This document shows, one piece after another, positions 2,237 through 34,251 of a stretch of 64,000 bases of DNA. Under the pieces are notes generated by a model. It saw nothing but the letters and a program-made list of their open reading frames with translations, did not search any database and was not told where the DNA came from. Every line of letters starts with the position of its first letter. The stretch's first letter is position 1. Both the position numbers and the translations under genes were made by a program. The stretch is from IMG/VR virus record IMGVR_UViG_3300003877_000001, positions 124,001 to 188,000 of that record; one strand, given 5' to 3'.

Positions 2237-2398
2237 CAACACTACACATTGTGTAGTGTATCGCAAATCAAAATAAAAATTTTTAATTTGTTGATTATTA
2301 ATATATTATAATCAAATATCGTGTATTGCGATATGCGATATAGTAATAATTTGAGTAAAGTATTGTTTTTCGGTACTTATCTCTAAAAATTACTAAAT

Positions 2399-2481
2399 AC
2401 ATCGGTGGCAGAGAGGCTTATGCACCTGACTTTTAATCAGGGTTGTTCGCAACAACGTGGGTTCGAATCCCACCCGATGTA
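2399..2481 (+). tRNA. tRNA-Lys(TTT) with long variable arm
   Basis: ACATCGG/CCGATGT; CCTGA-ctTTTaa-TCAGG; V-arm GTTG-ttcg-CAAC. Confidence 0.85.
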
Positions 2482-2532
2482 CAATAATTATCTTTAAATT
2501 GTTTTAATTGTTACAATATAAAGATAAAATAT

Positions 2533-12994: not shown

Positions 12995-13627
12995 ATGAAT
13001 TATTTAGAAGCAACAAAATATCCAAAGACAATGCATTTTGATTTCTCTGAATCATTACAAAATGATGATAGAAGATTAACGACATTGGAAGGTTTCATTG
13101 GTAAACGAGTAATCGTTACCGAGAAACTTGATGGAGAAAATTCGACAATTTACAATGACTATTACCATCCAAGATCGGTAATTGATGATGGTCATGAATC
13201 TAGAAATTGGCTTAAAGGGTATATACCCAATTTTCAGTATAAAATTCCTAAATATTGGAGGGTATGTGGTGAAAGTATGTATGCTGAACATTCAATAAAA
13301 TATGAAGAATTAAACACATTCTTCTATGCTTTTAGCATGTGGGATAATTTAAATATGTGTATCTCTTGGGATGAATTTGAACACCATTGTGATATATTAG
13401 ATATTGAACACGTTCCTGTTCTTTATGATGGTGTTTTCGATTATGTTAAAATAAAAGAGATTTATGAAAATTTAGATTTTAATAAACAAGAAGGTATTGT
13501 TGTTAGAGTTGCTTGTAAATTTCGTTATGATGAATTTCAAACACATACTGCCAAAGCAGTTAGACCTGCACATGTATCAACAGATGAACATTGGAAAAAA
13601 ACTTGGAAACCAAATAAATTAAAATAA
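12995..13627 (+). CDS. second RNA ligase family protein
   Basis: KYPKT.H, TEKLDGEN, CGE, EGIVVR. Confidence 0.85.
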   Translation: MNYLEATKYPKTMHFDFSESLQNDDRRLTTLEGFIGKRVIVTEKLDGENSTIYNDYYHPRSVIDDGHESRNWLKGYIPNFQYKIPKYWRVCGESMYAEHSIKYEELNTFFYAFSMWDNLNMCISWDEFEHHCDILDIEHVPVLYDGVFDYVKIKEIYENLDFNKQEGIVVRVACKFRYDEFQTHTAKAVRPAHVSTDEHWKKTWKPNKLK

Positions 13628-13858: not shown

Positions 13859-14323
13859 ATGAATAATAAACACATACGCATTTACATAGACATGGATAAT
13901 GTTTTATGTGATTATCAAAAAGCACATGACGAAGCAATAAAGAATAAACCTGAAATTGTTTATCCACAATCACAATATGGTTTCTTTAGAGATTTAGAAC
14001 CAACTAATTGTGCATTGATGGGATTTACTGTATTATCTAAAAACTTTGATGTTTGGATATTAACAGCACCATCAGTACAAAATCCAATGTGCTATACTGA
14101 AAAAAGAGAATGGGTAGAGAAAAATTTAGGTTTTGATGCTGCTAAACGATTAATATTATCACCAGATAAATCACTTTTAATTGGTGATTATCTTATTGAT
14201 GATATGGTAGAAGGTAGAGCAAAACAAAACGAATTTAATGGAACTCACATTGTTTTTGGGAATGAAGTATATCCTGATTGGTTATCAGTATTGGAATATT
14301 TCAAACAATACTTTAAAACATAA
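13859..14323 (+). CDS. 5'(3')-deoxyribonucleotidase (HAD)
   Basis: IYIDMDNVLCD, ILTAP, K..WV, GDYLIDD. Confidence 0.85.
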   Translation: MNNKHIRIYIDMDNVLCDYQKAHDEAIKNKPEIVYPQSQYGFFRDLEPTNCALMGFTVLSKNFDVWILTAPSVQNPMCYTEKREWVEKNLGFDAAKRLILSPDKSLLIGDYLIDDMVEGRAKQNEFNGTHIVFGNEVYPDWLSVLEYFKQYFKT

Positions 14324-14397
14324 AAACATGAAAAATTACGAAGAACTAACAATACTTTAAAACATAAAAACATGAAAAATTACGAAGAACTAACAAT
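14304..14397 (+). repeat. 44-bp exact tandem duplication spanning a gene junction
   Basis: AACAATACTTTAAAACATAAAAACATGAAAAATTACGAAGAACT twice; ATGs at 14328 and 14372. Confidence 0.85.
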
Positions 14398-14836
14398 TGA
14401 ATTAATTGATTATTATAAAAATAAATATGATGGTGAATTAATTATAAAATCAATTGAATACAAAACAGTATATATTAATGGAAATCATATTAAAAAATTA
14501 GAACATGTCTATGAAATTTATGTTCTTTTAGATTTATTAACCCCAAATGCAAATTCTTGGAATATTCCGAATTTTTTTAAAAGTAAAGTTTCTTTTGAAA
14601 ATGCAATTAAAATGTTTAAAGTTGCTGTAAATGGATATTTAGAAGCCTTATTAATTGAAAAAGAGTTTGTAGAAATAAGTTCAGAGAAAAGACTTTTAGT
14701 TGATTTATTATCAAAAGATATTAATTCTTTAAACGAAGAAGATTTTGATTTCATGATTTCACATTATCTAAAAATAGAAGAATATTTGAAAGTTCAAAAA
14801 TATGAAAATTTAAAAAAAAAATATTATGAAAAATAA
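14372..14836 (+). CDS. hypothetical protein
   Basis: 154-aa ORF overlapping the next start. Confidence 0.6.
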   Translation: MKNYEELTIELIDYYKNKYDGELIIKSIEYKTVYINGNHIKKLEHVYEIYVLLDLLTPNANSWNIPNFFKSKVSFENAIKMFKVAVNGYLEALLIEKEFVEISSEKRLLVDLLSKDINSLNEEDFDFMISHYLKIEEYLKVQKYENLKKKYYEK

Positions 14837-15734
14837 AAAAATAATTCTTCTCTGTGGAATCCCTGCTAGTGGAAAATCTACATGGGCAAATAAATTTATA
14901 TTAAATAATTCTAATTATGTTAGAATTAATAGAGATATGTATCGTTTAATGCTTGATGGTTCTCAAATAATGGATTTTAAGGGAGAAAAGTTAGTAACTG
15001 AATTAGTTAATAATGCAATTGTTTTGGCTACAAAGTCTAAGTATAACGTACTTGTTGACCAAACTAATGTTAACTTAAAGTACTTGAATGAAATGGTTGC
15101 ATTTTGTGAAAAAATTGCAGATGTTGAGTTTAAAATATTCGATATAACAGAAAAAGTCGCCATCGAAAGAGACTCAAATAGAGATGCTAAAGTAGGTGCA
15201 AAAGTAATCAAAAAAATGTACAAAAACTACTTAAATCTATTCTCTTCTAATTTCGATTTCTCAACAAGAAAAAGAAAACCACATATTGCTACCAACATCA
15301 AGTGGGAGCGTGATGGTACTTTACCAGATGCAGTGATTTTTGACATTGATAGTACTATAGCACATACTCAAGGTAAAAGAGGGATATTTGATTGGGATAA
15401 AGTTAATCTTGATATTGTAGATGAAATTGTTCTTGAAACAATTAAATCATATAAGGACTATGGTTATAAGATTATCTTTGTTACGGGTAGAGATGGTGTT
15501 TCACGAAAAATGACAGAAGATTGGTTAATACATAATAAAATACCTTTTGATATGTTATTCACTAAACCTAAAAATGATTTCAGAAAAGATATTATAAATA
15601 AAACAGAAATTTATCATAATTTCATTAAACCAAATTATAATGTATTAGCAGTTTATGATGACCGTAATTCTGTTTGTAAAATGTGGAGAAATTTAGGAGT
15701 AAAATGCTACCAAGTTCAAGAGGGTGATTTTTAA
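14826..15734 (+). CDS. pseT: polynucleotide 5'-kinase/3'-phosphatase
   Basis: P-loop GIPASGKST and RINRD; HAD FDIDST, VTGR, YDDR. Confidence 0.9.
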   Translation: MKNKKIILLCGIPASGKSTWANKFILNNSNYVRINRDMYRLMLDGSQIMDFKGEKLVTELVNNAIVLATKSKYNVLVDQTNVNLKYLNEMVAFCEKIADVEFKIFDITEKVAIERDSNRDAKVGAKVIKKMYKNYLNLFSSNFDFSTRKRKPHIATNIKWERDGTLPDAVIFDIDSTIAHTQGKRGIFDWDKVNLDIVDEIVLETIKSYKDYGYKIIFVTGRDGVSRKMTEDWLIHNKIPFDMLFTKPKNDFRKDIINKTEIYHNFIKPNYNVLAVYDDRNSVCKMWRNLGVKCYQVQEGDF

Positions 15735-15767
15735 TCCTCATTTTTTTTTTATTAAATAATAAATAAT

Positions 15768-16190
15768 ATGATAAAACAATTAGAAGTTTACAAGAAGTTT
15801 CAGATGAAATATCCTAAATCAATTTTAGGTGGTAGTTTTGGATTATTCCTTAGAGGAATTGATTTAAAAAGAAATTTAAAATATTCTGATTTGGATATTA
15901 CGACCCCTGAATTTACACCTAAAGGTGGATTAGATAATGATAAAAGTAGTTCAGAGGATTTTGACTTTACATTATATATACATAACAATAATCATTATCT
16001 TAAAATGGATATACGTGTAGTTGAAGACCATAAATATGATGTTGTAAATTACGAAGGATTTGACTTTAACGTAAAAACAAAGAAAGATATATTATATTGG
16101 AAACAACAATATGCTGAAAAGGGGGTAGAAAAACATATTGATGATTTAATAACAATAGCAACTGGTGTTAGACCCAAACGATCCATATGA
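15768..16190 (+). CDS. nucleotidyltransferase-like protein
   Basis: LGGSFGL...SDLDI motif. Confidence 0.5.
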   Translation: MIKQLEVYKKFQMKYPKSILGGSFGLFLRGIDLKRNLKYSDLDITTPEFTPKGGLDNDKSSSEDFDFTLYIHNNNHYLKMDIRVVEDHKYDVVNYEGFDFNVKTKKDILYWKQQYAEKGVEKHIDDLITIATGVRPKRSI

Positions 16191-16244
16191 TTTACCGTTT
16201 TAATAACTTATAAAATATTTTTAAAAATACTTGACTTTATTATT

Positions 16245-16310
16245 ATAATAGTGTAACTTTGACACATATTAAACGTATTTATAAATGAATTAGTGTATTA
16301 AATACATATA
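16245..16310 (+). promoter_or_regulatory. two candidate NrtR operators overlapping an ECF-like promoter
   Basis: TAGT-GT-aactttg-AC-ACATA and TAGT-GT-attaaat-AC-ATA (GT-N7-AC); TGTAAC-N16-CGTAT at 16252-16278. Confidence 0.6.
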
Positions 16311-16328
16311 GACTAAAATAGTTATATT

Positions 16329-17234
16329 ATGAGAGAAGAAATAAAAGAATATACAATCGGAGTTATAATTGGAAGATTCCAAATACATGAACTTCATGAT
16401 GCACATAAAGAGATGATTAGTGAAGTACTAAGTAGACACCAAAAGGTTATACTATTTTTAGGGGTATCACCTACATTATCAACAAGAAGAAATCCTTTAG
16501 ATTATCGCTCAAGAAAATTAATGATTGAAGAGATATATGGAAATGAAATGATTATCTTACCTATCAACGATAGAAAGTCTGATGAAATCTGGTCAGACCA
16601 AGTAGATAGTAAAATCAGAGAGGTAGAGCCAATTGGTTCTGTTGTATTATATGGATCAAGAGATTCATTTATTCCTCATTATAAAGGAAAGTATGATACT
16701 ATTGAATTAGTTCCTAAATCATTTATTTCTGCAAGCGAAGTAAGAAAAGAAATTTCTAAAAGAGTTGAAAGAAACAAAGATTTTAGAGCAGGAGTTATTT
16801 ACTCAACATATAATACATATCCAACAGTACATCCCGTTATAGATGTTGCCATTTTAAATGAAGATGCAACTGAAGTATTATTGGGAAGAAAAAAAAACGA
16901 ACAACTTTTTAGATTTGTTGGTGGATTTACCGATGTAACTGATGAATCGTATGAACAAACAGTTGTAAGAGAAGCACATGAAGAAACTGGTCTTGCTGTT
17001 GGTGATGTTAAATACATTACTTCAACAAGAGTAGATGATTGGAGATATAGATCAAATAATGAGCGTTCAGTAATGACTTCATTTTTCAAAGCAAAGAAAA
17101 TCTTTGGTATGGCAAAACCCAATGATGATATTGTAGCAGTTAAATGGCATCAAATTTATACTTTACGACCTAATGATGTTGTTGGTGAACACGAAAGATT
17201 GGTTGTTGCATTAAAAGAAAACTTAAAACTATAA
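16329..17234 (+). CDS. nadM: bifunctional NMN adenylyltransferase / Nudix ADP-ribose hydrolase
   Basis: GRFQ..H.AH, RNPL, ISASEVR; Nudix GGF..VREAHEETGL; DD. Confidence 0.9.
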   Translation: MREEIKEYTIGVIIGRFQIHELHDAHKEMISEVLSRHQKVILFLGVSPTLSTRRNPLDYRSRKLMIEEIYGNEMIILPINDRKSDEIWSDQVDSKIREVEPIGSVVLYGSRDSFIPHYKGKYDTIELVPKSFISASEVRKEISKRVERNKDFRAGVIYSTYNTYPTVHPVIDVAILNEDATEVLLGRKKNEQLFRFVGGFTDVTDESYEQTVVREAHEETGLAVGDVKYITSTRVDDWRYRSNNERSVMTSFFKAKKIFGMAKPNDDIVAVKWHQIYTLRPNDVVGEHERLVVALKENLKL

Positions 17235-17238
17235 AATC

Positions 17239-18726
17239 ATGAAAAATATAATAAATTTAATATTAAAAACAGATAGTTATAAATTAGGTCATTGGCAACA
17301 ATATCCAACAGGAATGAGAAAAGTGTATTCTTATATGGAAAGCAGAGGGGGTTTATTTCCTAAAACATTATTTACTGGATTAAACATTTATCTAAAAAAA
17401 TATCTCAAGGGTGCTGTTGTAACAATGGAAGATATTGATTATGCTGAAAAATTTACAGAAGAACATTTAGGTAGAAAACTATTTAATAGAGATAAGTGGG
17501 AATATATTGTTAAACGATATGGTGGTAAATTACCCATAAGAATTAAAGCAGTTAAAGAAGGTTCTTTAGTTCCAGTTAGTAATGTTTTATTGACAATAGA
17601 AAGTACCGACCACAATTGTTATTGGTTAACAAATGTTCTTGAAACTTTATTAATGAAACTATGGTATCCAACAACAGTAGCAACAAATGGATTTTATAGT
17701 AAACTTTTAATTAGTCAATATTTAAATAAAACAGCAGAAAACAAAGATTCTAATATTTGGAAATTACACGACTTTGGTTATAGAGGTGTATCTAGTGAAG
17801 AAACGGCAGGAATTGGTGGTATGGCACATCTTATTAACTTTAAGGGTAGTGACACCATTGAGGGAATTCTTTATGCTAGAGAGTATTATAATGAACATAT
17901 GGCAGGGTTTTCAGTTCCAGCGTCTGAACATTCAGTAGCATCTTCATTTGGTAAAGATTTCGAAGAAGAATATTTTTTAAATATGTTAAAACAATACCCA
18001 ACAGGTTTAGTATCAATAGTATCAGATACATATAGTGTTTTTAATTTTGTAGAAACAATGTCAACGAAATATAGAAAAGAAATCATAGAAAGAGATGGGA
18101 CTGTGGTATTTAGACCAGATAGTGGGCATCCTGTTGAAATAAACTCAAGACTGATTGATTTACTTTGGAATAAATTTGGTGGAACATATGTAAATGGTTA
18201 TAAATTATTAGATTCTCATGTAAGACTAATCCAAGGTGATGGTATTGACATTAAGATGATTAATGATATATTACATATGGGCGAACTTAAAGGATATTCT
18301 GCCGATAATTGGGTGTTTGGTTCAGGTGGTGCATTATTACAAAAGTGGACTAGAGATACTAATGAATTTGCAATTAAAGCATCCTATGGTGAAAGAGAAG
18401 TTGATGGAATTGTTAGTAAATTTTCAATAAGCAAAGACCCTATAACTTCTAAAAGTAAACGCTCAAAGGGTGGGATATTTAAATTAATACCAACAGAAGA
18501 TAGTTCATTCTTAACGATTTCATCTGAAAATTCAAAAGATAAAGGTACTTTTAGTAATTATGTTGATTGTTTAGATGTTGTATTTGAAAATGGTGAAATA
18601 AAAAGAGAGCAAACCATAGAAAATATTCGTAATATTGCAGATAATCATCTTGAAGTTGAATTAAAAGAAAATTACGATGTTATCGATAAACTAAATTTTG
18701 AAAAAAATTATGAAAAATTAAATTAA
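17239..18726 (+). CDS. nadV: nicotinamide phosphoribosyltransferase
   Basis: TDSYK..H, LHDFGYRG, PASEHS, VSDTY, RPDSG, IQGDG, FGSGG. Confidence 0.93.
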   Translation: MKNIINLILKTDSYKLGHWQQYPTGMRKVYSYMESRGGLFPKTLFTGLNIYLKKYLKGAVVTMEDIDYAEKFTEEHLGRKLFNRDKWEYIVKRYGGKLPIRIKAVKEGSLVPVSNVLLTIESTDHNCYWLTNVLETLLMKLWYPTTVATNGFYSKLLISQYLNKTAENKDSNIWKLHDFGYRGVSSEETAGIGGMAHLINFKGSDTIEGILYAREYYNEHMAGFSVPASEHSVASSFGKDFEEEYFLNMLKQYPTGLVSIVSDTYSVFNFVETMSTKYRKEIIERDGTVVFRPDSGHPVEINSRLIDLLWNKFGGTYVNGYKLLDSHVRLIQGDGIDIKMINDILHMGELKGYSADNWVFGSGGALLQKWTRDTNEFAIKASYGEREVDGIVSKFSISKDPITSKSKRSKGGIFKLIPTEDSSFLTISSENSKDKGTFSNYVDCLDVVFENGEIKREQTIENIRNIADNHLEVELKENYDVIDKLNFEKNYEKLN

Positions 18727-20602: not shown

Positions 20603-20677
20603 GGTCTTGTTAGTTTAGTTGGTTATAATACCACACTGGTACTGTGGAGACTGCGGTTCGAATCCGCAACAGGACTC
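20603..20677 (+). tRNA. tRNA-Thr(GGT), atypical
   Basis: GGTCTTG/CAGGACT; CCACA-ctGGTac-TGTGG. Confidence 0.65.
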
Positions 20678-20807
20678 TTAATAAAAAGTTATTTGACGTA
20701 TTGAACATTAAATGAAATGAAAACTAAGTGAAATTTTAATGTTATTTAGTTTTCAAAAATAATCTATTTTAAATCAGTTTTTATTTCATTTCGTAATATT
20801 TATTATT

Positions 20808-21492
20808 ATGAAATGGAATAAAAACGAAATAGATTACTGTAAAGAAAAATTTTCTAATGGAGAATCTCTAATTGATATTAGTAATGAATTAAATAGAACA
20901 ACAAAAGCAATTCAAATTAAAATGAGTCGATTAGGTGTTTTTAGACCACAAAAAAAATATTATATGACCTATATTTGTGGAAATTGTAAAACAACATTTA
21001 CTGCATTAATAAGTGAGAAAAGAAAATATTGTTCTGAACAATGTGCATCAATAATAAATAATAAAAAAAGAAAAAAAATGTAAACGTTGTAAGCAAACAA
21101 TTAATAATAATAATAACATTTATTGTAGTAAAAAATGTGAAATGTCAAACAAAGAAAATTATTATTTTACTAAAATAGAAAATAATGATTTAAATGATAT
21201 TAATCATAATACAGCAGAAAGATGGGTTAAAAGATATTTAATTCACAAATATGGTGAAAAATGTATGAAATGTGGTTGGAGTGAAATTCATAAAATAACA
21301 AAAAAAGTGCCGATCCAATTAAACCATATTAATGGTGATTCAGATAATAATAATTTATTAAATGTTGAGTTACTTTGCCCTAATTGTCATTCATTAACAC
21401 ATAATTTTGGATCATTAAATTTTGGTAATGGTAGAACAAAAAGAAAATTAGAGAGAAATAAAAGATATAAAAAAGTTAGCGTGTCCGATTGA
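20808..21492 (+). pseudogene. HNH endonuclease split by a frameshift in an A-run (ORFs 20808-21083 and 21142-21492)
   Basis: Second frame is open from 21079 (CKRC..YCSKKC); QLNHING..N...LLCPNCH; stop codon lies inside tRNA-Cys. Confidence 0.7.
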
Positions 21493-21545
21493 TAAGGTGG
21501 ATGGTTGCAACCCATTTTATGCAGGTTTGAATCCTGTCGCTAACT
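21475..21545 (+). tRNA. tRNA-Cys(GCA)
   Basis: GTTAGCG/CGCTAAC, U73; GATGG-ttGCAac-CCATT. Confidence 0.85.
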
Positions 21546-21665
21546 CTAATTATACCGAATTCGGTATAAATAAAATCATAGTAATGTAATGACCTCAAAA
21601 GTCATTTTGTTACTATGAATAAACATCGGGGATGATATACTATTTTATCGTAGTACCCCGTCCAT

Positions 21666-21737
21666 GCGAATATAGTATAATGGCTATTATATGATCCTTC
21701 CAAGTTCGAGATGTCGGTTCGATTCCGACTATTCGCT
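21666..21737 (+). tRNA. tRNA-Gly(TCC)
   Basis: GCGAATA/TATTCGC, U73; loop ctTCCaa. Confidence 0.85.
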
Positions 21738-21807
21738 CAAAGTTGCTATTCATATCTACTTAATGACTTCATAAGTCATTTCAATGATACAAATAACAAC
21801 AAAACAT

Positions 21808-21890
21808 GCCCTATTGGTGGAACAGTAGACACGCTGGTTTTAGAAGCCAGTGTCAGAAATGGCGTGTAGGTGCAAATCCTACATAGGGTA
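21808..21890 (+). tRNA. tRNA-Leu(TAG)
   Basis: CTGGT-ttTAGaa-GCCAG; long V-arm. Confidence 0.88.
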
Positions 21891-21951
21891 CTAATAACGT
21901 AAAATATAATTTACAATAACATACATAATTGTAAATTATATTTAATCATAT

Positions 21952-22034
21952 GCCCATATGATGGAACGGTAGACATGCCACACTAAGAACGTGGTGTTAG
22001 AAATGACGTGTAGGTTCAAATCCTACTATGGGTA
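21952..22034 (+). tRNA. tRNA-Leu(AAG)
   Basis: GCCCATA/TATGGGT; loop ctAAGaa; long V-arm. Confidence 0.82.
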
Positions 22035-22146
22035 CAATCCTGAGTACAGGTTAACTCTGTGATGTTGTGTGACATATAAGTTTAGAGGTTGAGAAATCAA
22101 TACGGCTTCAATGAGAGAATAACGTAATTTATTCAAAGTCACAATT

Positions 22147-22218
22147 GCTCTTGTAGTTCAACGGTTAGAATATGTGGCTTATATCCACCAGACGAAGGTT
22201 CGACTCCTTCCAAGAGTA
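22147..22218 (+). tRNA. tRNA-Ile(TAT)
   Basis: GCTCTTG/CAAGAGT; GTGG-ctTATat-CCAC. Confidence 0.8.
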
Positions 22219-22224
22219 CTAAAG

Positions 22225-22297
22225 GATGGTGTAGCACAAAGGCAGGTGCACTTGACTGTTAATCAAGAATATGTGGGTTCGACCCCCACCGCCATCG
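22225..22297 (+). tRNA. tRNA-Asn(GTT)
   Basis: CTTGA-ctGTTaa-TCAAG; G73. Confidence 0.88.
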
Positions 22298-22302
22298 CAT
22301 AT

Positions 22303-22374
22303 TGTCTCGTAGTATAACGGTTAGTATAATTGCCTGATACGCAATAGATAAGGGTTCGATTCCCTTCGAGACTA
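22303..22374 (+). tRNA. tRNA-Ile(GAT)
   Basis: ATTGC-ctGATac-GCAAT. Confidence 0.85.
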
Positions 22375-22436
22375 CAAAAATTAATTAAAACCTTTAACGA
22401 ATCGAACTTTTTTTATTTTTTTCAGTATTTATATAT

Positions 22437-22850
22437 ATGAAAAAAACATGTACTATTTGTAATATAAAAAAAGATTTTGAAGAATTCTCTTGGAGAAATA
22501 AAAGTAAAAATATTAAACATTCACAATGTAAAGATTGTAAGAAAATTATCGATAATAAACATTATAGTGTTTCGAAAAAAAGAAGAGAAGATATTAGAAT
22601 TAGGTCAAAAATTCATTATAATTTTCTTAGAGAATATATAAAAAGATTAAAATTATTTGGCGAATGTAATGTGTGTGGAGAAAAAAGATGGTATGTTTTA
22701 GATTTTCACCATATAAATGAAAAAAATGAAAATATTAGTTTTTTAGTTAAAAGTGGAGTATCTATTTTTACATTAAAATCTGAAATTAGAAAATGTGAAT
22801 TGGTTTGTTCTAATTGTCATAGAGAAATCCATCATTTTAAAAAAAAATAA
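22437..22850 (+). CDS. HNH endonuclease with Zn-finger (same family as 2655-3092)
   Basis: CxxC; LDFHH...EIRKC.LVCSNCH. Confidence 0.8.
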   Translation: MKKTCTICNIKKDFEEFSWRNKSKNIKHSQCKDCKKIIDNKHYSVSKKRREDIRIRSKIHYNFLREYIKRLKLFGECNVCGEKRWYVLDFHHINEKNENISFLVKSGVSIFTLKSEIRKCELVCSNCHREIHHFKKK

Positions 22851-22853
22851 TTT

Positions 22854-22925
22854 GGGATAGTAACTCACTGGTAGAGTGTCGTTTTGAAGCAGCGAAGGTA
22901 GTAGGTTCGATTCCTACCTGTCCCA
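22854..22925 (+). tRNA. tRNA-Phe(GAA)
   Basis: GGGATAG/CTGTCCC; TCGTT-ttGAAgc-AGCGA. Confidence 0.8.
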
Positions 22926-22982
22926 CAAAGGATGTTTCTTTTATTGAAAAATGATATCAAAGTAAATGAAAGCTAAGTCCAT

Positions 22983-23055
22983 AGTGATGTAGTTTAGAGG
23001 TCAAAACGCCACTCAGAGATAGTGGAAATCGGTAGTTCGATCCTACCCATCACGA
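22983..23055 (+). tRNA. tRNA of undetermined identity (loop caGAGat, A33, short V-arm)
   Basis: GTGATG/CATCAC; CCACT/AGTGG; T-arm GGTAG-ttcgatc-CTACC. Confidence 0.55.
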
Positions 23056-23061
23056 CTAAAA

Positions 23062-23146
23062 GCCGATTTCGCATAGTGATCGATTGCACTGGTCTTGTAA
23101 ACCAGTAGGTTTATACCTCACGTCAGTTTGAATCTGACAATCGGCT
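23062..23146 (+). tRNA. tRNA-Thr(TGT) with long variable arm
   Basis: GCCGATT/AATCGGC; CTGGT-ctTGTaa-ACCAG; V-arm AGG-tttata-CCT. Confidence 0.82.
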
Positions 23147-23174
23147 CAAAAAATTGACTCAATGAGTCAAATAT

Positions 23175-23248
23175 TGTCTCGTAGTTCAACTGGTGAGAGC
23201 ACCACGCTGATAACGTGGAAGTTATGGGTTCGAATCCCATCGAGACAA
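23175..23248 (+). tRNA. tRNA-Ile(GAT)
   Basis: TGTCTCG/CGAGACA; CCACG-ctGATaa-CGTGG. Confidence 0.9.
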
Positions 23249-23321
23249 CTTCATAGATGCAGGTTCGAATCCTGTCTCTTCCTTCGGGGAGTGTGGTGTA
23301 ACTGGAAAGCATAATGGACTT
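23249..23321 (+). ncRNA. circularly permuted tRNA-like RNA (3' half, TTCG, 5' half)
   Basis: TTCAT-agat-GCAGG-ttcgaat-CCTGT-CTCTTCC-ttcg-GGGAGTG-tg-GTGT-aactggaaa-GCAT-a-ATGGA-ctt. Confidence 0.75.
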
Positions 23322-23411
23322 AGAGGGTTGGCAGAGTCTGGCTTATTGTACTAGTCTTGAAAACTAGCATACGTTCATAGCGTATCGTGGGTTCGAATCC
23401 CACACCCTCTG
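23322..23411 (+). tRNA. tRNA-Ser(TGA)
   Basis: AGAGGGT/ACCCTCT, G73; CTAGT-ctTGAaa-ACTAG; long V-arm. Confidence 0.9.
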
Positions 23412-23416
23412 CATTT

Positions 23417-23489
23417 GATTTGGTAGTAATAATGGTAAAACGTCAGCCAGTTAAGTTGATAGATGTAGGTTCGAATCCTACCCAAATCG
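23417..23489 (+). tRNA. tRNA-Asn(GTT), A33 variant
   Basis: GATTTGG/CCAAATC, G73; TCAGC-caGTTaa-GTTGA. Confidence 0.7.
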
Positions 23490-23562
23490 CAAACAAATGT
23501 TTTATTGATAAATAAATATTTTGTTAACGTATAAGTAGACGTACTTATATAGGAGTTGTTTT

Positions 23563-23632
23563 ATGTAAATAGCATAATGGCAATGCAGCACCATAAAAGG
23601 TGTGTATGTAGGTTCGATTCCTATTTTACTAA
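23563..23632 (+). pseudogene. degenerate tRNA (6-nt anticodon loop)
   Basis: D- and T-arms present; GCACC-ataaaa-GGTGT; mispaired top of acceptor. Confidence 0.5.
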
Positions 23633-23650
23633 AACAACTATAACAATTAT

Positions 23651-23723
23651 ATTTTCGTAGTTCAATGGATAAGAACATACAAGTGCGAATTGTAAGATAT
23701 GGGTTCGAATCCCATCGAAAATA
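23651..23723 (+). tRNA. tRNA-Arg(GCG)
   Basis: ATTTTCG/CGAAAAT; TACAA-gtGCGaa-TTGTA. Confidence 0.8.
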
Positions 23724-23771
23724 CTATTTTTTTAAAATTGAAACGTATTTATATGTATAAGCGTTTTAATT

Positions 23772-24461
23772 ATGATTAAATATGAAAAAAAAAGATTAGA
23801 ATTAATTGTTTCTAAATCAGAAACATATAGACAGGTATTGTTAGCATTTGAACGAAACACTTCATCTGCATCATATAAAATTTTAAAAAGAAAATTAAAA
23901 GAATGGAATATTTCCATTGATCATTTTCTTTCTAGTAAAGATGTTGTACATAAATTACAAAAAGAGGGTAAATTAATAAAATATTCTGATGACGATATTT
24001 TTAAAAAATCTAATATTGGTAGAGGTACTGTTAAGAAACGATTTTTAACGAAAGTAGAAAAGAAATGTGTTTTATGTGGGCAAGATGAAAATTGGAATGG
24101 CATGAAAATATCTTTAATAATGGATCATAAAAATGGAATTAATATTGATCATAGATTTGAAAATTTAAGATTACTTTGCCCTAATTGTAATGCAGGAATA
24201 CCTACACATTGTAAAGGTAATATTGGTATTTTAAATAATATAAACAAACAAATTAAATTAAACAATAAAATAGATAAAAGAACCTTATATAATGGAGTTG
24301 GAAAACCTAAACAACGCAAAGTTGAAAGACCATCATACAATGAATTAATTAAAGATATTAACAATTTAGGATATTTAGGTACTGGTAGAAAATACGGTGT
24401 TAGTGACAATTCTATTAGAAAGTGGAAAAATTTTTATGAAAAACAAGCCTCTATGGTGTAA
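23772..24461 (+). CDS. HNH endonuclease with C-terminal HTH
   Basis: CVLCG..MDHKNG..NLRLLCPNCN; GRKYGVSDNSIRKW; 3' end overlaps tRNA-Arg. Confidence 0.85.
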   Translation: MIKYEKKRLELIVSKSETYRQVLLAFERNTSSASYKILKRKLKEWNISIDHFLSSKDVVHKLQKEGKLIKYSDDDIFKKSNIGRGTVKKRFLTKVEKKCVLCGQDENWNGMKISLIMDHKNGINIDHRFENLRLLCPNCNAGIPTHCKGNIGILNNINKQIKLNNKIDKRTLYNGVGKPKQRKVERPSYNELIKDINNLGYLGTGRKYGVSDNSIRKWKNFYEKQASMV

Positions 24462-24518
24462 AGGATAGCATTATTGTCTTCGAAACAAAAGGTCAGGGTT
24501 CAAATCCTTGTGGGGGTA
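24447..24518 (+). tRNA. tRNA-Arg(TCG)
   Basis: GCCTCTA/TGGGGGT; TTGT-ctTCGaa-ACAA. Confidence 0.82.
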
Positions 24519-24523
24519 CAATT

Positions 24524-24565
24524 GCGAGTGTGGTGCTAACGGTAACACATTTCCAATCACTCGCT
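24524..24565 (+). pseudogene. internally deleted tRNA-Gly (acceptor + D-arm only)
   Basis: GCGAGTG/CACTCGC-T with a D-arm and TTCCAA remnant; no T-arm. Confidence 0.55.
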
Positions 24566-24633
24566 CAAATAATATTTCAGCTAGATGAAATTTAAATGTG
24601 GAAACTACGTAACGGTTTAAACAGTTATTTAAT

Positions 24634-24707
24634 GCGAGTAACGCATAAATGGTGGTGCACCTGCTTGCCAAGCAGGAATAGAGTCGGTTCAATCCCGATT
24701 ACTCGCT
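24634..24707 (+). tRNA. tRNA-Gly(GCC)
   Basis: GCGAGTA/TACTCGC; CCTGC-ttGCCaa-GCAGG. Confidence 0.88.
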
Positions 24708-24772
24708 CTAATTCAAGTGTTTAATGATTGCAAATCATAGCAGACCTTCCAAGTCATGGCTTGAGTTTTTAT

Positions 24773-24844
24773 GGTGCAGTAACTCAGGGGTAGAGTGGTT
24801 GATTGAAGATCAACTGGACGTTGGTTCGAATCCAACCTGCACCA
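24773..24844 (+). tRNA. tRNA-Phe(GAA)
   Basis: GGTGCAG/CTGCACC; GTTGA-ttGAAga-TCAAC. Confidence 0.9.
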
Positions 24845-24849
24845 CAAAC

Positions 24850-24922
24850 AGGGGATTAGTGTAATGGATTAGCACATGATTCTTCTAAAATTAGAGTATG
24901 AGTTCGAATCTCATATCCCCTA
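24850..24922 (+). tRNA. tRNA-Arg(TCT)
   Basis: AGGGGAT/ATCCCCT; TGATT-ctTCTaa-AATTA. Confidence 0.82.
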
Positions 24923-24989
24923 CTATGGTTGTTCGATTATACTTTCAAGTATTTTTTATGCATTAGTTAGAAGTAGAGCAAGAAGTAAA

Positions 24990-25100
24990 GCAAAAAAATT
25001 AGGTATGAATAAATGTGTTATATGTGGTTATGATAAACAATGAAAGTAATTTAATTCCTTTGTGTCGTAATGATCATTGGGAATATGATTATAATATGTT
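24990..25100 (+). pseudogene. HNH endonuclease remnant
   Basis: NKCVICGYDKQ* ... NLIPLCRNDHWEYD. Confidence 0.55.
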
Positions 25101-25113
25101 AAATATATAATAT

Positions 25114-25185
25114 GTCCGTATGGTGTAACGAATAGCACATAATGCTTCTAACATTAGAGTCGGGGTTTGATTCCCTGTACGGATA
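25114..25185 (+). tRNA. tRNA-Arg(TCT)
   Basis: GTCCGTA/TACGGAT; TAATG-ctTCTaa-CATTA. Confidence 0.82.
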
Positions 25186-25317
25186 CAAAGTCACGTTAAG
25201 TATGATTTAATGAATAAAAGGACAAGGGTTAACACTTGGTATGTGAGATAATCACATTTTACTGGACTTTTTTTGGAAATTTTGTAACATAAATACATTA
25301 TATGCGTATAACAGCAT

Positions 25318-25734
25318 ATGCCATCAGGAAAAACACATGATATTAGCTCAATAGCATTATTGCCGATTTTATTAATTGGGTTATACTATCTTAAATTGGA
25401 AACTTTACCAATAATTCTAATAATTATAGGGTATTTATTTTCTAGTTTTATGTTTAATGGAGATTTAGACATTAATAGTAGACCATACAATAGATGGTTA
25501 TGGTTAAGAATAATATGGTTACCATACCAAGGATTTTTTTCACATAGAAGTATATGGACACACGGTATTATTATTGGAACAGTAGTAAGGTTACTATATA
25601 TTTCACCAATATTAATACCAATTACAACATATTTTAATTATATAGATTATATAACAATAGAACAAACATTATTTATAGTATTAGGATTAGAATTAGGTTC
25701 TTCATTACATTCAATAATGGATTATTTGTTTTAA
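25318..25734 (+). CDS. DUF2227-like membrane metal-binding protein
   Basis: MPSGKTHD, DLDI.S, W.PY..F.HRS..THG. Confidence 0.75.
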   Translation: MPSGKTHDISSIALLPILLIGLYYLKLETLPIILIIIGYLFSSFMFNGDLDINSRPYNRWLWLRIIWLPYQGFFSHRSIWTHGIIIGTVVRLLYISPILIPITTYFNYIDYITIEQTLFIVLGLELGSSLHSIMDYLF

Positions 25735-25775
25735 AGTAATTTAAAACAAATATTATATAAAACATAAAATAGTGT

Positions 25776-26300
25776 ATGGAATTTAATGAATCAAAAAAAT
25801 CGGGAGATATTATTGAAGAAGAAGTATTAAAAATAATACATCAAAAATATCCTAAAGCAGAAACAACTAAACACTTAGGTAAATTTAGTGATTATGATAT
25901 TTGGATACCTGAAATTAATGATGGTATTGAAGTTAAGGGTGATTATATGTCAGCTAAAACAGGTAATCTTGTTATTGAAGTAGAAATGGGTAGTAAATTA
26001 TCTGCACTGTCAGTAACAAAAGCAAAATATTGGGTTTTTGTTGAAGGGTATAGATATATTTGGATAAGTCCATTAGATATTTATCGTTTTCTTGAACAAC
26101 ATCCATATAATAGAGTACCATTTATTGGTAAAGGTGATACTACTGAAAAATTTGCGTATTTAGTTTCACATAGAAGATTTTGTGATTATGTACTTCAGGT
26201 TGGTAGAATAGAATTTATAGATAAAAATTCTCCATTATATTTCGATAGTTTTAGTAATATGGATGATGAATTAAAATTAAATAATAAAATAAAGCCATAG
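25776..26300 (+). CDS. PD-(D/E)XK nuclease-like protein
   Basis: YDI...IEVKGD..TGNLVIE. Confidence 0.65.
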   Translation: MEFNESKKSGDIIEEEVLKIIHQKYPKAETTKHLGKFSDYDIWIPEINDGIEVKGDYMSAKTGNLVIEVEMGSKLSALSVTKAKYWVFVEGYRYIWISPLDIYRFLEQHPYNRVPFIGKGDTTEKFAYLVSHRRFCDYVLQVGRIEFIDKNSPLYFDSFSNMDDELKLNNKIKP

Positions 26301-26318
26301 GTATTTATAAAATAAAAT

Positions 26319-26405
26319 AGAGGATTGGCAGAGTGGTAATGCAGTAGTTTGCTAAACTATACATCGTGTAAAAGCGGTGCGTGGGTTCGAGTCCCACATC
26401 CTCTA
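26319..26405 (+). tRNA. tRNA-Ser(GCT)
   Basis: AGAGGAT/ATCCTCT; GTAGT-ttGCTaa-ACTAT; long V-arm. Confidence 0.88.
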
Positions 26406-26625
26406 CATGAAAAATAATATTCAATACGTTGATTATAATGAAGCTCAATTTAGATACATGGATAAACTCTATGGTATGAATAAACCACAAAGTTTTATAA
26501 AAAAACTAATCAATGCAGCCAAAGAAAGAGGTAGATTAACAAAAGACCAAGACTATTACTTAATGTACTATCTACAAAAGGGTCAAACACCTTATGATGC
26601 AAAACTCTTGCCAAACAATATATAA

Positions 26626-33716: not shown

Positions 33717-33786
33717 GTTGCCATAGGTTGGTGTAAAATATTAGTCTCTAAAACTAATAACGAGAGTTCGAATCTCTCTGGCAGCA
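33717..33786 (+). tRNA. amber-suppressor tRNA (anticodon CTA)
   Basis: GTTGCCA/TGGCAGC-A; TTAGT-ctCTAaa-ACTAA; GAGAG-ttcgaat-CTCTC; weak D-arm. Confidence 0.78.
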
Positions 33787-34251
33787 CTTAAATATTAAAA
33801 ATATGAAAGATAATGTAGAATATAAAATAGTTTCTAGTGATTCAACTGATTTCATGGGAAATAGAGTAAGTAAATTAATGTCAGAGGGTTGGGTATTATA
33901 TGGAAGTCCATATTTTAATAGTCAAAAAGAATCTAATTGTCAAGCAATGGTTAGACACCCAAAAACTAAAGAAATTTTAAACGATTAACATGTCAAAAGT
34001 ATATGTTGATTTAAGAGTAGAAGCATTTGAAGAAGATTTAAATGATTTTCTAACATTATTAGGAAAAATTAATTATACAGGACGTATTGGTGCAAGCAGA
34101 AGCATTAAAGTAAATATTGATGGTGATGGTTCTGGTTATATTGGTGTTAAAAGACTAAGTGATAAAAAACCAATACATGAATGGGTAAATTTAGATGAAA
34201 AACAATTAAAAAAAGTGTCTGACGGTGAAGACTTTGACGACCATTATATAG

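What the first reader, a model, noticed from the sequence alone, without database searches (positions are those of the whole stretch)
21952..23723. Rare anticodons and non-canonical tRNA bodies
Seen: Leu(AAG), Ile(TAT), Arg(GCG); Thr(TGT) with a long V-arm; A33 instead of U33 at 22983 and 23417; unusual bases at 32/37/38 (Phe ttGAAgc, Ile ctGATac). Established: most bacteria use Leu-GAG, lysidine-modified Ile-CAT and Arg-ACG. Inference: anticodon loops altered to avoid host nucleases or dependence on TilS/TadA.
Basis: partly seen in the sequence, partly recalled or inferred. Interest (0 to 1): 0.6.

Follow-up and report, generated by a model that had tools for sequence, protein, structure and literature searches.

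The report
Odd tRNA genes of a jumbo phage
The flagged stretch is the centre of the tRNA gene array of a 326-kb bacteriophage. Its strangest gene, a threonine tRNA with an extra arm, belongs to a widespread phage tRNA family that includes the phage T5 tRNA known to help defeat a bacterial tRNA-cutting defence.

Summary
The window lies in a 325,854-bp phage genome (27% GC) with 46-49 tRNA genes covering all 20 amino acids plus an amber suppressor. The rare anticodons fit the phage's AT-rich codon use (ATA 32.5 per 1000, CTT 12.1, CGT 4.2) and need neither TilS nor TadA, which the phage does not encode. The long-arm Thr(UGU) is not a one-off. A covariance model built from 56 other viral sequences scores it 83.3 bits and phage T5's tRNA-Thr 82.0. 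Published work shows T5 tRNA-Thr, with T5 tRNA-Lys, rescues cells from the PARIS nuclease AriB. The genome also has a long-arm Lys(UUU), three long-arm Met(CAU) and four short-arm 'Leu' tRNAs. Such class-swapped tRNAs recur in more than 100 viral contigs and in T5 and phiCbK. The phage carries Pnkp, Rnl1, Rnl2-type ligases and a CCA-adding enzyme. A33 is real but rare elsewhere, and the array holds decaying copies, so A33 may be drift. Nuclease evasion is supported by homology and context only. The host is unknown and no expression data could be obtained.

The parts
21952..22035 (+). tRNA-Leu(AAG): type II, A34, loop ctAAGaa
   Evidence: CTT is the main CTN codon at 12.1 per 1000
22147..22219 (+). 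tRNA-Ile(UAU), loop ctTATat; reads ATA without lysidine
   Evidence: ATA is 32.5 per 1000; Ile(TAT) 19 against Ile(GAT) 43 in other phage arrays
22225..22298 (+). tRNA-Asn(GUU) copy 1: canonical U33, G73, 3' stem gives U36AAUCA41
22303..22375 (+). tRNA-Ile(GAU), loop ctGATac (C38)
   Evidence: the same loop occurs in 6 of 43 phage Ile(GAT)
22437..22850 (+). HNH homing endonuclease gene inside the array
   Evidence: phrog_2255, E = 2.4e-29
22854..22926 (+). tRNA-Phe(GAA), loop ttGAAgc (G37 in place of the bacterial A37)
   Evidence: G37 in 23 of 45 phage Phe tRNAs, this exact loop in 8; T5 Phe also has G37
22983..23056 (+). Short-arm (type I) tRNA with anticodon GAG, A33 (base 23015), A1.G72 mismatch, A73, C74; identity uncertain
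   Evidence: 53.2 bits; 20 Watson-Crick pairs
23062..23147 (+). Type II tRNA-Thr(UGU): long variable arm (aggt-ttat-acct plus a cac tail), G1-C72, C2-G71, U73; member of the T5 tRNA-Thr family
   Evidence: model R1 scores it 83.3 bits, E = 2.4e-25
23175..23249 (+). tRNA-Ile(GAU) copy 2, canonical loop ctGATaa
   Evidence: 70.1 bits
23256..23285 (+). Isolated T-arm remnant (gcagg-ttcgaat-cctgt); relic of a lost tRNA gene
   Evidence: read directly from the sequence; called by neither program
23322..23412 (+). tRNA-Ser(UGA), canonical type II, G73
23417..23490 (+). tRNA-Asn(GUU) copy 2: A33 (base 23449), G73, weak D-stem, 3' stem gives U36AAGUU41
   Evidence: 51.0 bits; only one other A33 Asn lineage found in IMG/VR
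23562..23633 (+). Degenerate tRNA-like gene: 6-nt anticodon loop, acceptor mismatches, the only one lacking C74
   Evidence: (39 bits)
23651..23724 (+). tRNA-Arg(GCG), loop gtGCGaa (G32); reads CGC and CGU without inosine
   Evidence: 65.7 bits; Arg(GCG) 4 against Arg(ACG) 29 in other phage arrays
23772..24461 (+). Second HNH homing endonuclease gene
   Evidence: phrog_10822, E = 1.5e-35
20604..26406 (+). Whole local tRNA block: 21 tRNA genes from Thr(GGT) to Ser(GCT), including the Rfam-only Cys(GCA) at 21475-21545
2399..2482 (+). Type II tRNA-Lys(UUU), 84 nt, next to a normal Lys(UUU) at 2533-2606; the same pairing occurs in huge phage LR756504
   Evidence: R1 scores it 68.2 bits; 62 distinct relatives in viral contigs
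12995..13627 (+). Rnl2-type RNA ligase
   Evidence: PF09414, 93.8 bits
14826..15734 (+). Polynucleotide kinase-phosphatase (Pnkp)
   Evidence: HAD_PNKP 147.4 bits plus AAA_33 58.8 bits
1..668 (+). 3' part of a T4 RnlA-family RNA ligase gene (whole gene is G000 123571-124668)
   Evidence: PF09511 71.7 bits; TIGR02308 80.7 bits, below its equivalog cut-off
33717..33787 (+). Amber suppressor tRNA(CUA)
   Evidence: no sign that TAG is recoded genome-wide

Best explanation
The interval is the core of the tRNA gene array of a 326-kb tailed phage of a bacterium.

What the array is:
- It is a nearly self-sufficient decoding set (all 20 amino acids) tuned to the phage's extremely AT-rich codons.
- U34, G34 or A34 tRNAs replace the host solutions that need lysidine (TilS) or inosine (TadA).
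- Many isoacceptors come as two structurally different copies.
- Some copies belong to widespread, virus-associated families in which the tRNA class is swapped: a long variable arm on Thr(UGU), Lys(UUU) and Met(CAU), and no long arm on 'Leu'.

How these tRNAs most likely work (inference):
- The class-swapped tRNAs keep the acceptor and anticodon identity elements that host synthetases read, so they are still charged correctly.
- They present a different body to host tRNA-cutting defence nucleases.
- Together with the phage's Pnkp/Rnl repair enzymes and CCA-adding enzyme, they keep translation running when host tRNAs are cleaved or depleted.

Shown versus inferred:
- Shown: gene structures, family membership, codon match, absence of TilS/TadA, presence of repair genes.
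- Inferred: expression, charging and nuclease resistance of this phage's tRNAs.
- The two A33 tRNAs and the degenerate gene are most likely redundant copies drifting or decaying. A33 may alter nuclease or ribosome behaviour, but nothing here shows it.
For: Genome and tRNA set:
- 325,854-bp virus record, CheckV 100% complete, with 46 (ARAGORN) to 49 (Rfam) tRNA genes. Cys was found by Rfam only.
- Baseplate, DNA-polymerase and terminase-like matches (the terminase-like hits sit on a protein whose best match is a DNA helicase) and a bacterial-type long-arm tRNA-Tyr indicate a tailed phage of a bacterium.
- Codon use: ATA 32.5, CTT 12.1, CGT 4.2, CGC 0.2, GAT 62.7 per 1000.
- No TilS, TadA or the aminoacyl-tRNA synthetase families searched.

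Type II Thr family:
- 63 of 80 pattern hits in viral contigs are long-arm Thr(TGT), 58 of them distinct.
- In the alignment, 99.7% of cells are paired and 17 of 20 pairs change on both sides. G1-C72 holds in 55/56 and C2-G71 in 56/56. U73 occurs in 48/58.
- Model R1, built without the window or T5, scores the window gene 83.3 bits and T5 tRNA-Thr 82.0. Ordinary short-arm tRNAs score about 18-56 bits; only other long-arm tRNAs come between (window Lys 68.2, LR756504 Lys 61.6, window Ser 56.7).
- T5 tRNA-Thr is 87 nt with a long arm, and T5 tRNA-Asn is 83 nt.
- T5 tRNA-Lys plus tRNA-Thr (plus tRNA-Asn) rescue PARIS/AriB toxicity (PMC12409363).

Type II Lys family:
- 69 of 82 hits in viral contigs are long-arm Lys(TTT), against about 8 of 80 loci in prokaryote genomes.
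- The variable-arm stems differ in sequence but still pair.

Other context:
- Repair and maturation genes.
- All 45 intact genes, including the odd ones, keep C74 followed by A or T. The degenerate one does not.
Against: - The host is unknown, so no nuclease or host tRNA could be compared.
- No expression or charging data exist.
- Codon matching alone explains the rare anticodons.
- A33 recurs in only one other viral lineage.
- The array visibly contains decaying copies (23256-23285 and 23562-23633).
- Long-arm variants also occur for Gly, Cys, Trp and Val, which are not known nuclease targets.
- Type II and type I Thr(UGU) keep the AriB site equally often.
- The T5 rescue experiments used over-expression and did not test the variable arm. 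The paper never mentions it.
Confidence: 0.6

Rival explanations
1. Pure codon supply. The array only supplements tRNAs for the phage's AT-rich codons in a host with different codon use. The odd bodies and loops are neutral heritage of phage tRNA lineages and have nothing to do with defence.
For: - Anticodons match the phage's preferred codons.
- The set covers all 20 amino acids.
- The same loops and rare anticodons recur in many phage arrays, as shared descent would also give.
Against: - It does not explain duplicate copies of one anticodon with different bodies, such as Lys(UUU) type I plus type II, two Asn, two Phe and two Ile(GAU).
- It does not explain the strong conservation of a variable-arm hairpin across divergent phages.
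- It does not explain the T5 rescue data (PMC12409363).
- The phage carries a tRNA repair kit.
Confidence: 0.2
2. Decay. The non-canonical genes of the interval (the two A33 tRNAs, the short-arm 'Leu'(GAG), and G32 in Arg(GCG)) are redundant duplicates on the way to becoming pseudogenes. The array is shuffled by homing endonucleases.
For: - A T-arm remnant and a degenerate tRNA lie in the same 500 bases.
- Each A33 gene has a redundant partner: Asn copy 1, and Leu(AAG)/Leu(UAG).
- A33 is found in only one other Asn lineage.
- 'Leu'(GAG) lacks a Leu-type D-arm and has a 1-72 mismatch.
- HNH genes flank the genes.
Against: - The A33 genes have intact stems (18-20 Watson-Crick pairs), canonical T-loops and the conserved C74.
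- Non-U33 tRNAs in other phage arrays pair as well as U33 ones: 20.5 against 20.4 pairs, n = 31 and 990.
- Decay cannot apply to Thr(UGU), which belongs to a conserved family.
Confidence: 0.3
3. Recoding or deliberate mistranslation. The long-arm tRNAs are recognised through the arm by SerRS, LeuRS or TyrRS, and so insert Ser, Leu or Tyr at ACA, AAA or AUG codons.
For: - SerRS and LeuRS do not read the anticodon (established knowledge).
- The D-arms of the long-arm Lys and Thr tRNAs resemble bacterial type II D-arms.
Against: - ThrRS identity pairs G1-C72 and C2-G71 are 98-100% conserved, and U73 (not the G73 of Ser or the A73 of Leu and Tyr) occurs in 48 of 58.
- The variable stems are short (3-4 bp) with a 3-4 nt tail, unlike tRNA-Ser.
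- ACA and AAA are among the phage's most used codons.
- T5 tRNA-Thr restores growth when host tRNA-Thr is cleaved (PMC12409363).
Confidence: 0.04
4. Decoys. Some variant tRNAs are not used in translation but bind and titrate host nucleases or other tRNA-binding defence proteins.
For: - Belukhina et al. raise the possibility that over-expressed viral tRNAs inhibit AriB by competition.
- A33 and the uncertain identity of 'Leu'(GAG) would fit a non-translating RNA.
Against: No direct evidence. The identity elements of Asn copy 2 (G73, GUU) and the conserved C74 suggest normal maturation and charging.
Confidence: 0.08

Closest known systems
[quoted passage not shown]
   Same: - A large tRNA array interspersed with small ORFs and homing endonucleases.
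- A long-arm tRNA-Thr(UGU) of the same family (82.0 against 83.3 bits with R1).
- Short-arm Leu tRNAs and G37 in tRNA-Phe.
   Different: - A different, uncultured phage lineage: the DNA polymerase is at most 23.5% identical to any sequenced phage.
- The window's genes end in C74 without CCA, while T5 genes encode CCA.
- The window's long-arm set is Thr, Lys and Met; T5's is Thr and Asn.
- The window Thr has U36AAACC41; T5 Thr has UAAUCA.
- No functional data exist for the window.
Nuclease-insensitive phage tRNAs through anticodon-loop mutations (van den Berg et al. 2023, PMC10264068)
   Same: Phage copies differ from canonical tRNAs in and near the anticodon loop. The idea is to replace host tRNAs that are destroyed during infection.
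   Different: - That work compares phage and host loops at known cleavage sites. Here the host is unknown.
- The best-supported difference here is in the tRNA body (the variable arm), which that paper does not treat.
T4 tRNA repair pathway (Pnkp plus Rnl1) against the anticodon nuclease PrrC
   Same: Pnkp (kinase plus HAD_PNKP phosphatase), a T4 RnlA-family ligase and Rnl2-type ligases are encoded close to the tRNA arrays.
   Different: The RnlA match is below NCBIfam's equivalog cut-off. Activity and target are untested. The phage combines repair with a full replacement set of tRNAs.
tRNA arrays of uncultured huge phages (LR745206.1, LR756504.1) and Caulobacter phages phiCbK and CcrSC
   Same: - Adjacent long-arm plus normal copies of one anticodon: Lys(UUU), Asn(GUU), Arg(UCU).
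- Short-arm Leu tRNAs, C33 variants and the C74-without-CCA gene ends.
- phiCbK has tRNA-Lys of 88 and 91 nt, and CcrSC has Lys(CTT) of 87 nt.
   Different: Only the tRNAs and an HNH gene show similarity. The genomes are otherwise unrelated at DNA level. Public annotations give only the amino acid and do not flag the structure.
Minimal decoding sets of Mycoplasma and organelles: Ile(UAU), unmodified A34, U34 reading four-codon boxes, short-arm tRNA-Leu in animal mitochondria
   Same: AT-rich genome, U34 tRNAs for four-codon boxes, Ile(UAU), A34 tRNAs, and type I Leu (established knowledge).
   Different: These are cellular or organellar systems with their own synthetases. The phage relies on host synthetases.

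Membership tests
tRNA (Rfam RF00005) | Cloverleaf scoring above the curated gathering score (29 bits) | tested here: met
   All genes of the interval score 39-70 bits. The weakest (23563-23632, 39 bits) has a 6-nt loop and is degenerate.
Phage type II tRNA-Thr(UGU) family (T5 tRNA-Thr type) | High score with a covariance model built from other members | tested here: met
   R1 (56 viral sequences, built without the window or T5) scores 23062-23147 at 83.3 bits, E = 2.4e-25, the top hit. T5 scores 82.0; ordinary short-arm tRNAs score about 18-56 bits, with other long-arm tRNAs (Lys 68.2 and 61.6, Ser 56.7) in between.
Phage type II tRNA-Thr(UGU) family (T5 tRNA-Thr type) | Long variable region forming a 3-5 bp hairpin with a 3-4 nt 3' tail | tested here: met
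   The window has aggt-ttat-acct plus cac. In the family, 69% have a hairpin of at least 3 bp against 25% of shuffles.
Phage type II tRNA-Thr(UGU) family (T5 tRNA-Thr type) | Thr identity set (G1-C72, C2-G71, anticodon UGU, U73 or A73) and the 3-bp D-stem with an 11-nt D-loop (GCATAGTGGTCGATTGC) | tested here: met
   The window has G1-C72, C2-G71, U73 and D-arm GCATAGTGATCGATTGC. Family conservation is 55/56 and 56/56.
Phage type II tRNA-Thr(UGU) family (T5 tRNA-Thr type) | Functions in translation and rescues cells from AriB | not testable with these tools
   Shown only for T5 tRNA-Thr when co-expressed with T5 tRNA-Lys (PMC12409363).
Canonical bacterial tRNA-Leu | Long variable arm and Leu-type D-arm (3-bp stem, long loop), plus A73 | tested here: not met
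   22983-23056 has a 5-nt variable loop and a 4-bp D-stem with an 8-nt loop. Only A73 is present. It is therefore not filed as a canonical tRNA-Leu. Leu(AAG) at 21952 does meet these features.
Nuclease-insensitive phage tRNAs (anticodon-loop escape) | Differs from the host's tRNA at the recognition or cleavage site of a host nuclease | not testable with these tools
   Host and its nucleases are unknown. By analogy with E. coli AriB (site U36AAUC|A41): Thr has UAAACC, Lys type I has UAACGG and Asn copy 2 has UAAGUU (all changed); Lys type II and Asn copy 1 have UAAUCA (unchanged) (PMC12409363).
Nuclease-insensitive phage tRNAs (anticodon-loop escape) | Resists cleavage in an assay | not testable with these tools
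   A bench assay is needed.
Lysidine (TilS) dependent AUA decoding | A tRNA-Ile2(CAU) plus TilS | tested here: not met
   No TilS: PF01171 gives only 17.6 bits on a QueC-like protein. AUA is covered by Ile(UAU). None of the five CAT genes was assigned as Ile2 (not examined further).
Inosine (TadA) dependent CGN decoding | tRNA-Arg(ACG) plus TadA | tested here: not met
   The genome has no Arg(ACG) gene. Its deaminase scores 28.9 bits against the TadA model's cut-off of 150 and looks like a dCMP deaminase.
T4-type tRNA repair (Pnkp plus Rnl1) | Kinase-phosphatase and RnlA-family ligase genes | tested here: met
   HAD_PNKP 147.4 bits plus AAA_33 58.8 bits. RNA_lig_T4_1 scores 71.7 bits against a cut-off of 28.3. 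TIGR02308 scores 80.7 bits, below its equivalog cut-off. Activity was not tested.

The most novel reading that the evidence does not exclude
Swapping the tRNA class is a general, body-level way for phages to escape tRNA-targeting immunity.
- A widespread, virus-associated set of long-arm Thr(UGU), Lys(UUU), Asn(GUU) and Met(CAU) tRNAs, and short-arm Leu tRNAs, keeps the elements that host synthetases read.
- These tRNAs are no longer recognised by nucleases such as AriB, PrrC or bacterial Schlafens, which grip the anticodon stem and D-loop region where the extra arm emerges.
- The window's Thr and Lys genes, and T5's PARIS-neutralising Thr and Asn tRNAs, would be members.
- In T5, the two long-arm tRNAs keep the AriB site UAAUC, while the short-arm T5 Lys has it mutated.
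- Across viral contigs, long-arm Lys(UUU) keep UAAUC in 41/67 against 12/46 for short-arm copies.
Probability: 0.3. Interest if true: 0.8.

Novelty: new member of a known kind. Interest (0 to 1): 0.58.

Why it matters
Phage tRNAs are now recognised as counter-measures to bacterial defences that cut tRNAs, such as PrrC, PARIS, retron effectors and Schlafens. How the phage copies escape is known for only a few loop or stem substitutions.

This array shows, in one genome, the whole repertoire:
- modification-independent anticodons;
- duplicated isoacceptors with different bodies;
- a repair kit.

It also led to the observation that the extra-arm Thr and Lys tRNAs form large virus-associated families that include tRNAs of model phages T5 and phiCbK. 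That turns a vague idea into a cheap experiment: remove or graft the arm and test cleavage and charging. I found no paper that discusses this architecture, although my literature search was limited.

For annotation, it warns that long-arm Thr, Lys, Asn or Met tRNAs and short-arm Leu tRNAs in viral contigs are real genes rather than errors.

Tried and rejected
Searches for close relatives:
- No close relative was found, so there is no test of conservation of A33.
- Megablast and blastn of the array against sequenced phages gave only generic tRNA and HNH hits.
- The NAMPT-based locus search found nothing.
- DNA polymerase relatives are about 35% identical and carry few or no tRNAs. One 55-kb record is an identical fragment of the same phage.
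- An exact-pattern search for the Thr D-arm found nothing in viral contigs. It found three unrelated metagenome contigs that again carry long-arm Thr, Lys and Asn.

Ideas tested and set aside:
- Stop-codon recoding, suggested by the tRNA(CUA), is not supported. Reading TAG or TGA through adds only 1-2% of ORF cover. No other genetic code was used.
- The idea that long arms are restricted to tRNAs decoding ANN codons was rejected. Gly, Cys, Trp and Val variants also occur.
- Pairwise identity of the odd tRNAs to 1,435 other phage tRNAs gave no informative nearest relative.
- The scan for recurrence of A33 Asn found 20 hits, of which only one distinct sequence is a true A33 Asn.

Tools not used or unavailable:
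- The costly protein searches, structure prediction and complex prediction were not needed.

Caveats on the counts:
- 'Type II' was taken as an ARAGORN length of at least 80 nt.
- The sequences are phylogenetically related, so the Fisher test is only indicative.


Full report
**1. The observation**

ARAGORN finds 26 tRNA genes in the window and 13 in the flagged interval. Rfam's tRNA model confirms them at 39-70 bits against a cut-off of 29.

- Leu(AAG), 21952-22035
- Ile(TAT), 22147-22219
- Ile(GAT) with loop ctGATac, 22303-22375
- Phe(GAA) with loop ttGAAgc, 22854-22926
- Thr(TGT) of 86 nt with a variable-arm hairpin, 23062-23147
- Arg(GCG), 23651-23724

A33 is present in the genes that start at 22983 and 23417, at bases 23015 and 23449. 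The Infernal alignments show this independently.

- The GAG tRNA with A33 is a 74-nt short-arm tRNA with an A1.G72 mismatch, so it is not a canonical tRNA-Leu.
- 23562-23633 is a degenerate tRNA with a 6-nt anticodon loop.
- About 23256-23285 is a lone T-arm remnant.
- Rfam alone finds a tRNA-Cys(GCA) at 21475-21545.

**2. Context**

The window is bases 124001-188000 of a 325,854-bp IMG/VR virus record judged complete, at about 27% GC.

- The genome encodes baseplate proteins, a DNA polymerase, a protein with terminase-like matches (its best match is a DNA helicase) and a CCA-adding enzyme.
- Its tRNA-Tyr has the bacterial long arm. It is therefore a tailed jumbo phage of a bacterium.
- Its DNA polymerase is at most 23.5% identical to that of any sequenced phage and about 35% identical to other IMG/VR contigs. 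It has no close relatives.
- The genome has 46 (ARAGORN) to 49 (Rfam) tRNA genes, in clusters at about 105, 109-119, 125-126, 144.6-150.4 and 157.7 kb.
- These cover all 20 amino acids plus an amber suppressor.
- Reading TAG or TGA through does not improve ORF cover, so the standard code holds.
- HNH homing-endonuclease genes lie between the tRNA genes, at 22437-22850 and 23772-24461.

**3. The rare anticodons**

Codon use in 255 long ORFs is extremely AT-biased. Rates per 1000 codons:

| Codon | Rate | Note |
|---|---|---|
| ATA | 32.5 | 37% of Ile codons |
| CTT | 12.1 | the main CTN codon |
| CGT | 4.2 | |
| CGC | 0.2 | |
| GAT | 62.7 | |

- Ile(UAU), Leu(AAG), Arg(GCG), and elsewhere in the genome Asp(AUC), match these codons.
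- The genome has no Arg(ACG).
- It has no TilS. The only PP-loop hit is 17.6 bits on a QueC-like protein.
- Its one deaminase is dCMP-deaminase/ComEB-like, scoring 28.9 bits against a cut-off of 150 for TadA.
- No synthetase of the Lys/Asn/Asp, Thr/Ser/Pro/His or Leu/Ile/Val/Met families is encoded. Host enzymes must do the charging.

In 1,435 distinct tRNAs from 159 other viral loci:

| Feature | Count |
|---|---|
| Ile(TAT) against Ile(GAT) | 19 against 43 |
| Arg(GCG) against Arg(ACG) | 4 against 29 |
| Leu(AAG) | 4 |
| G37 in Phe tRNAs | 23 of 45 (loop ttGAAgc in 8) |
| Ile loop ctGATac | 6 of 43 |

So these loops and anticodons are recurrent phage features, not peculiarities of this genome.

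**4. The long-arm Thr**

A pattern for a Thr(UGU) loop followed, 20-30 nt later, by the T-loop found more than 120 places in viral contigs. ARAGORN of the 80 fetched as Thr(TGT) of at least 80 nt, 58 of them distinct.

- Aligned, they share G1-C72 (55/56), C2-G71 (56/56), and a 3-bp D-stem with the loop consensus GCATAGTGGTCGATTGC.
- U73 occurs in 48 of 58.
- The variable hairpin is usually followed by a 3-4 nt tail.
- 99.7% of cells are paired, and 17 of 20 pairs show changes on both sides.
- A covariance model built from 56 of them, without the window, scores the window gene 83.3 bits (the top hit). It scores tRNA-Thr of phage T5 82.0 bits and ordinary short-arm tRNAs about 18-56 bits; only other long-arm tRNAs (two Lys, one Ser) fall between.
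- T5's gene is 87 nt with a long arm. T5 tRNA-Asn is 83 nt with a gtc-gaaa-gac hairpin. T5's Leu(UAA) and Leu(UAG) are short-arm tRNAs.

Belukhina et al. (PMC12409363) showed three things:
- The PARIS nuclease AriB cleaves E. coli tRNA-Lys(UUU), Thr(UGU) and Asn(GUU) at U36AAUC|A41.
- AriB also depends on the D-loop (U16).
- T5's versions of these three tRNAs rescue cells and phages.

Their text never mentions the variable arm.

**5. The same phenomenon elsewhere**

The genome also has:
- a long-arm Lys(UUU) (window 2399-2482) just upstream of a normal one;
- three long-arm Met(CAU) with a 1-72 mismatch;
- four short-arm 'Leu' tRNAs.

Other phages show the same:
- Huge uncultured phages LR745206 and LR756504 have adjacent long and normal copies of Lys(UUU), Asn(GUU) and Arg(UCU), plus short-arm Leu tRNAs and C33 variants.
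- The Lys(UUU) variable stems of the window and of LR756504 differ completely in sequence (ttgt/acaa against gaga/tctc), yet both pair.
- The Lys pattern hit more than 114 viral places, and 69 of 82 are long-arm Lys(TTT), 62 of them distinct.
- The same pattern in 596 Gb of prokaryote genomes gave such a tRNA in only about 8 of 80 loci. Two of those sit in phage-like tRNA arrays of MAG contigs.
- Cultured carriers include phiCbK (tRNA-Lys of 88 and 91 nt, Trp of 84 nt) and CcrSC.
- In the 1,435-tRNA sample, long versions are frequent for Asn(GUU) 14/66, Cys 8/30, Gly(UCC) 9/50, Trp 6/32 and Met 9/74.
- They are absent for Ala(UGC), Phe, Arg(ACG) and Arg(UCU).
- About 35-40% of Leu(UAA/UAG/CAA) genes are short-arm.

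**6. A33 and decay**

- Non-U33 tRNAs make up 38 of 1,421 in the sample: 27 C, 6 A, 5 G.
- They are as well paired as U33 tRNAs.
- A scan for A33 Asn found only one other lineage.
- Both A33 genes here have a redundant partner. They lie beside a T-arm relic and a degenerate gene.
- On the other hand, they have intact stems and keep a feature shared by all 45 intact genes of the genome: C74 followed by A or T, never CCA. The degenerate gene has lost it.
- I cannot decide between a tolerated or useful variant and early decay.

**7. Mechanism**

Shown:
- a complete, codon-matched tRNA set that does not depend on TilS or TadA;
- duplicated isoacceptors with different bodies;
- membership of the Thr gene in the T5 family;
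- Pnkp (window 14826-15734), Rnl2-type ligases (12995-13627 and one more elsewhere), a T4 RnlA-family ligase straddling the window start, and a CCA-adding enzyme.

Inferred:
- The array replaces host tRNAs that are cleaved or depleted during infection, and the repair enzymes mend what is cut.
- The swapped class changes what body-reading nucleases see, while leaving acceptor and anticodon identity intact.

Suggestive but weak:
- In T5, the two long-arm tRNAs keep the AriB site while the short-arm Lys has it mutated.
- Long-arm Lys(UUU) keep UAAUC in 41/67 against 12/46 for short-arm phage copies. Fisher p = 0.0003, with no correction for relatedness.
- Thr shows no such difference.

**8. Known versus new**

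- Phage tRNAs as an answer to tRNA-cutting defences, and loop mutations as the escape route, are published (PMC10264068, PMC12409363, PMC11555353, PMC13056530).
- The window is a new member of that kind, from an unknown phage lineage.
- I found no discussion of the class swap itself in six full-text searches. This is despite its presence in T5 and phiCbK annotations. That search is limited and is not proof of novelty.

**9. Limits**

- The host is unknown.
- There are no reads.
- There is no close relative.
- The counts rest on pattern-ascertained, related sequences.

Noticed in passing
whole genome G000; window genes listed: All 45 intact tRNA genes end N73-C74 followed by A or T, never CCA, in a genome with 14% C. 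Only the degenerate gene at 23562 lacks C74. The arrays of huge phages LR745206 and LR756504 show the same gene ends. This suggests a shared 3'-processing signal, completed by the phage's CCA-adding enzyme (G000 290259-292040, minus strand).
   Followed up: partly
G000 2371-2458 (minus strand), 116501-116587, 118720-118804 (loci L001, L006): Three paralogous long-arm tRNA(CAU) genes, 82-85% identical, each with a mismatch at pair 1-72. This is reminiscent of bacterial initiator tRNA. Similar long-arm Met(CAT) genes occur in other viral contigs (for example L404, with C1.A72).
   Followed up: partly
window 12995-18726 and the gene straddling the window start (G000 123571-124668): A run of likely counter-defence genes lies just upstream of the tRNA block. 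It comprises an Rnl2-type ligase, Pnkp, an NMNAT-like/Nudix protein (16329-17234) and NAMPT (17239-18726), which together form an NAD salvage pair, plus a T4 RnlA-family ligase.
   Followed up: partly
window 4821-8483: The ribonucleotide reductase large subunit is interrupted by an intein with a LAGLIDADG endonuclease domain. A second intein remnant sits at the start of the Rnl2-type ligase at G000 222190-222858.
   Followed up: no
window 33717-33787: An amber suppressor tRNA(CUA) is present, although TAG is not recoded genome-wide. TAG ends 32 of 255 long ORFs.
   Followed up: partly
G000 112265-112337 and 111200-111271 (L006): There is a tRNA-Asp(AUC) with A34, matching GAT at 62.7 per 1000. 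There is also an Asp(GUC) with a pyrimidine at position 37 (loop ttGTCtc). The loops ctGTCta and ttGTCta recur in 10 of 51 phage Asp tRNAs.
   Followed up: partly
G000 105328-105400, minus strand (L006): The second tRNA-His(GUG) has C33 (loop tcGTGac). In other phage arrays C33 is the commonest non-U33 base (27 of 38).
   Followed up: partly
L424 (metagenome contig JACCDZ010063940.1): Long-arm Lys(UUU) (85 nt), Thr(UGU) (86 nt) and Asn(GUU) (80 nt) lie together within 1.3 kb. These are the same three anticodons that AriB targets in E. coli.
   Followed up: no
window 25318-25734: A DUF2227 metal-binding protein gene (128 bits) sits inside the tRNA block. Its function is unknown.
   Followed up: no
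G000 105094-105164 and 3416-3483, minus strand: Two further low-scoring tRNA-like genes, Gln(UUG) and His(GUG), have non-canonical T-loops (agcgtaa and tgtaaga). Rfam finds them; ARAGORN finds them only at a relaxed threshold.
   Followed up: partly
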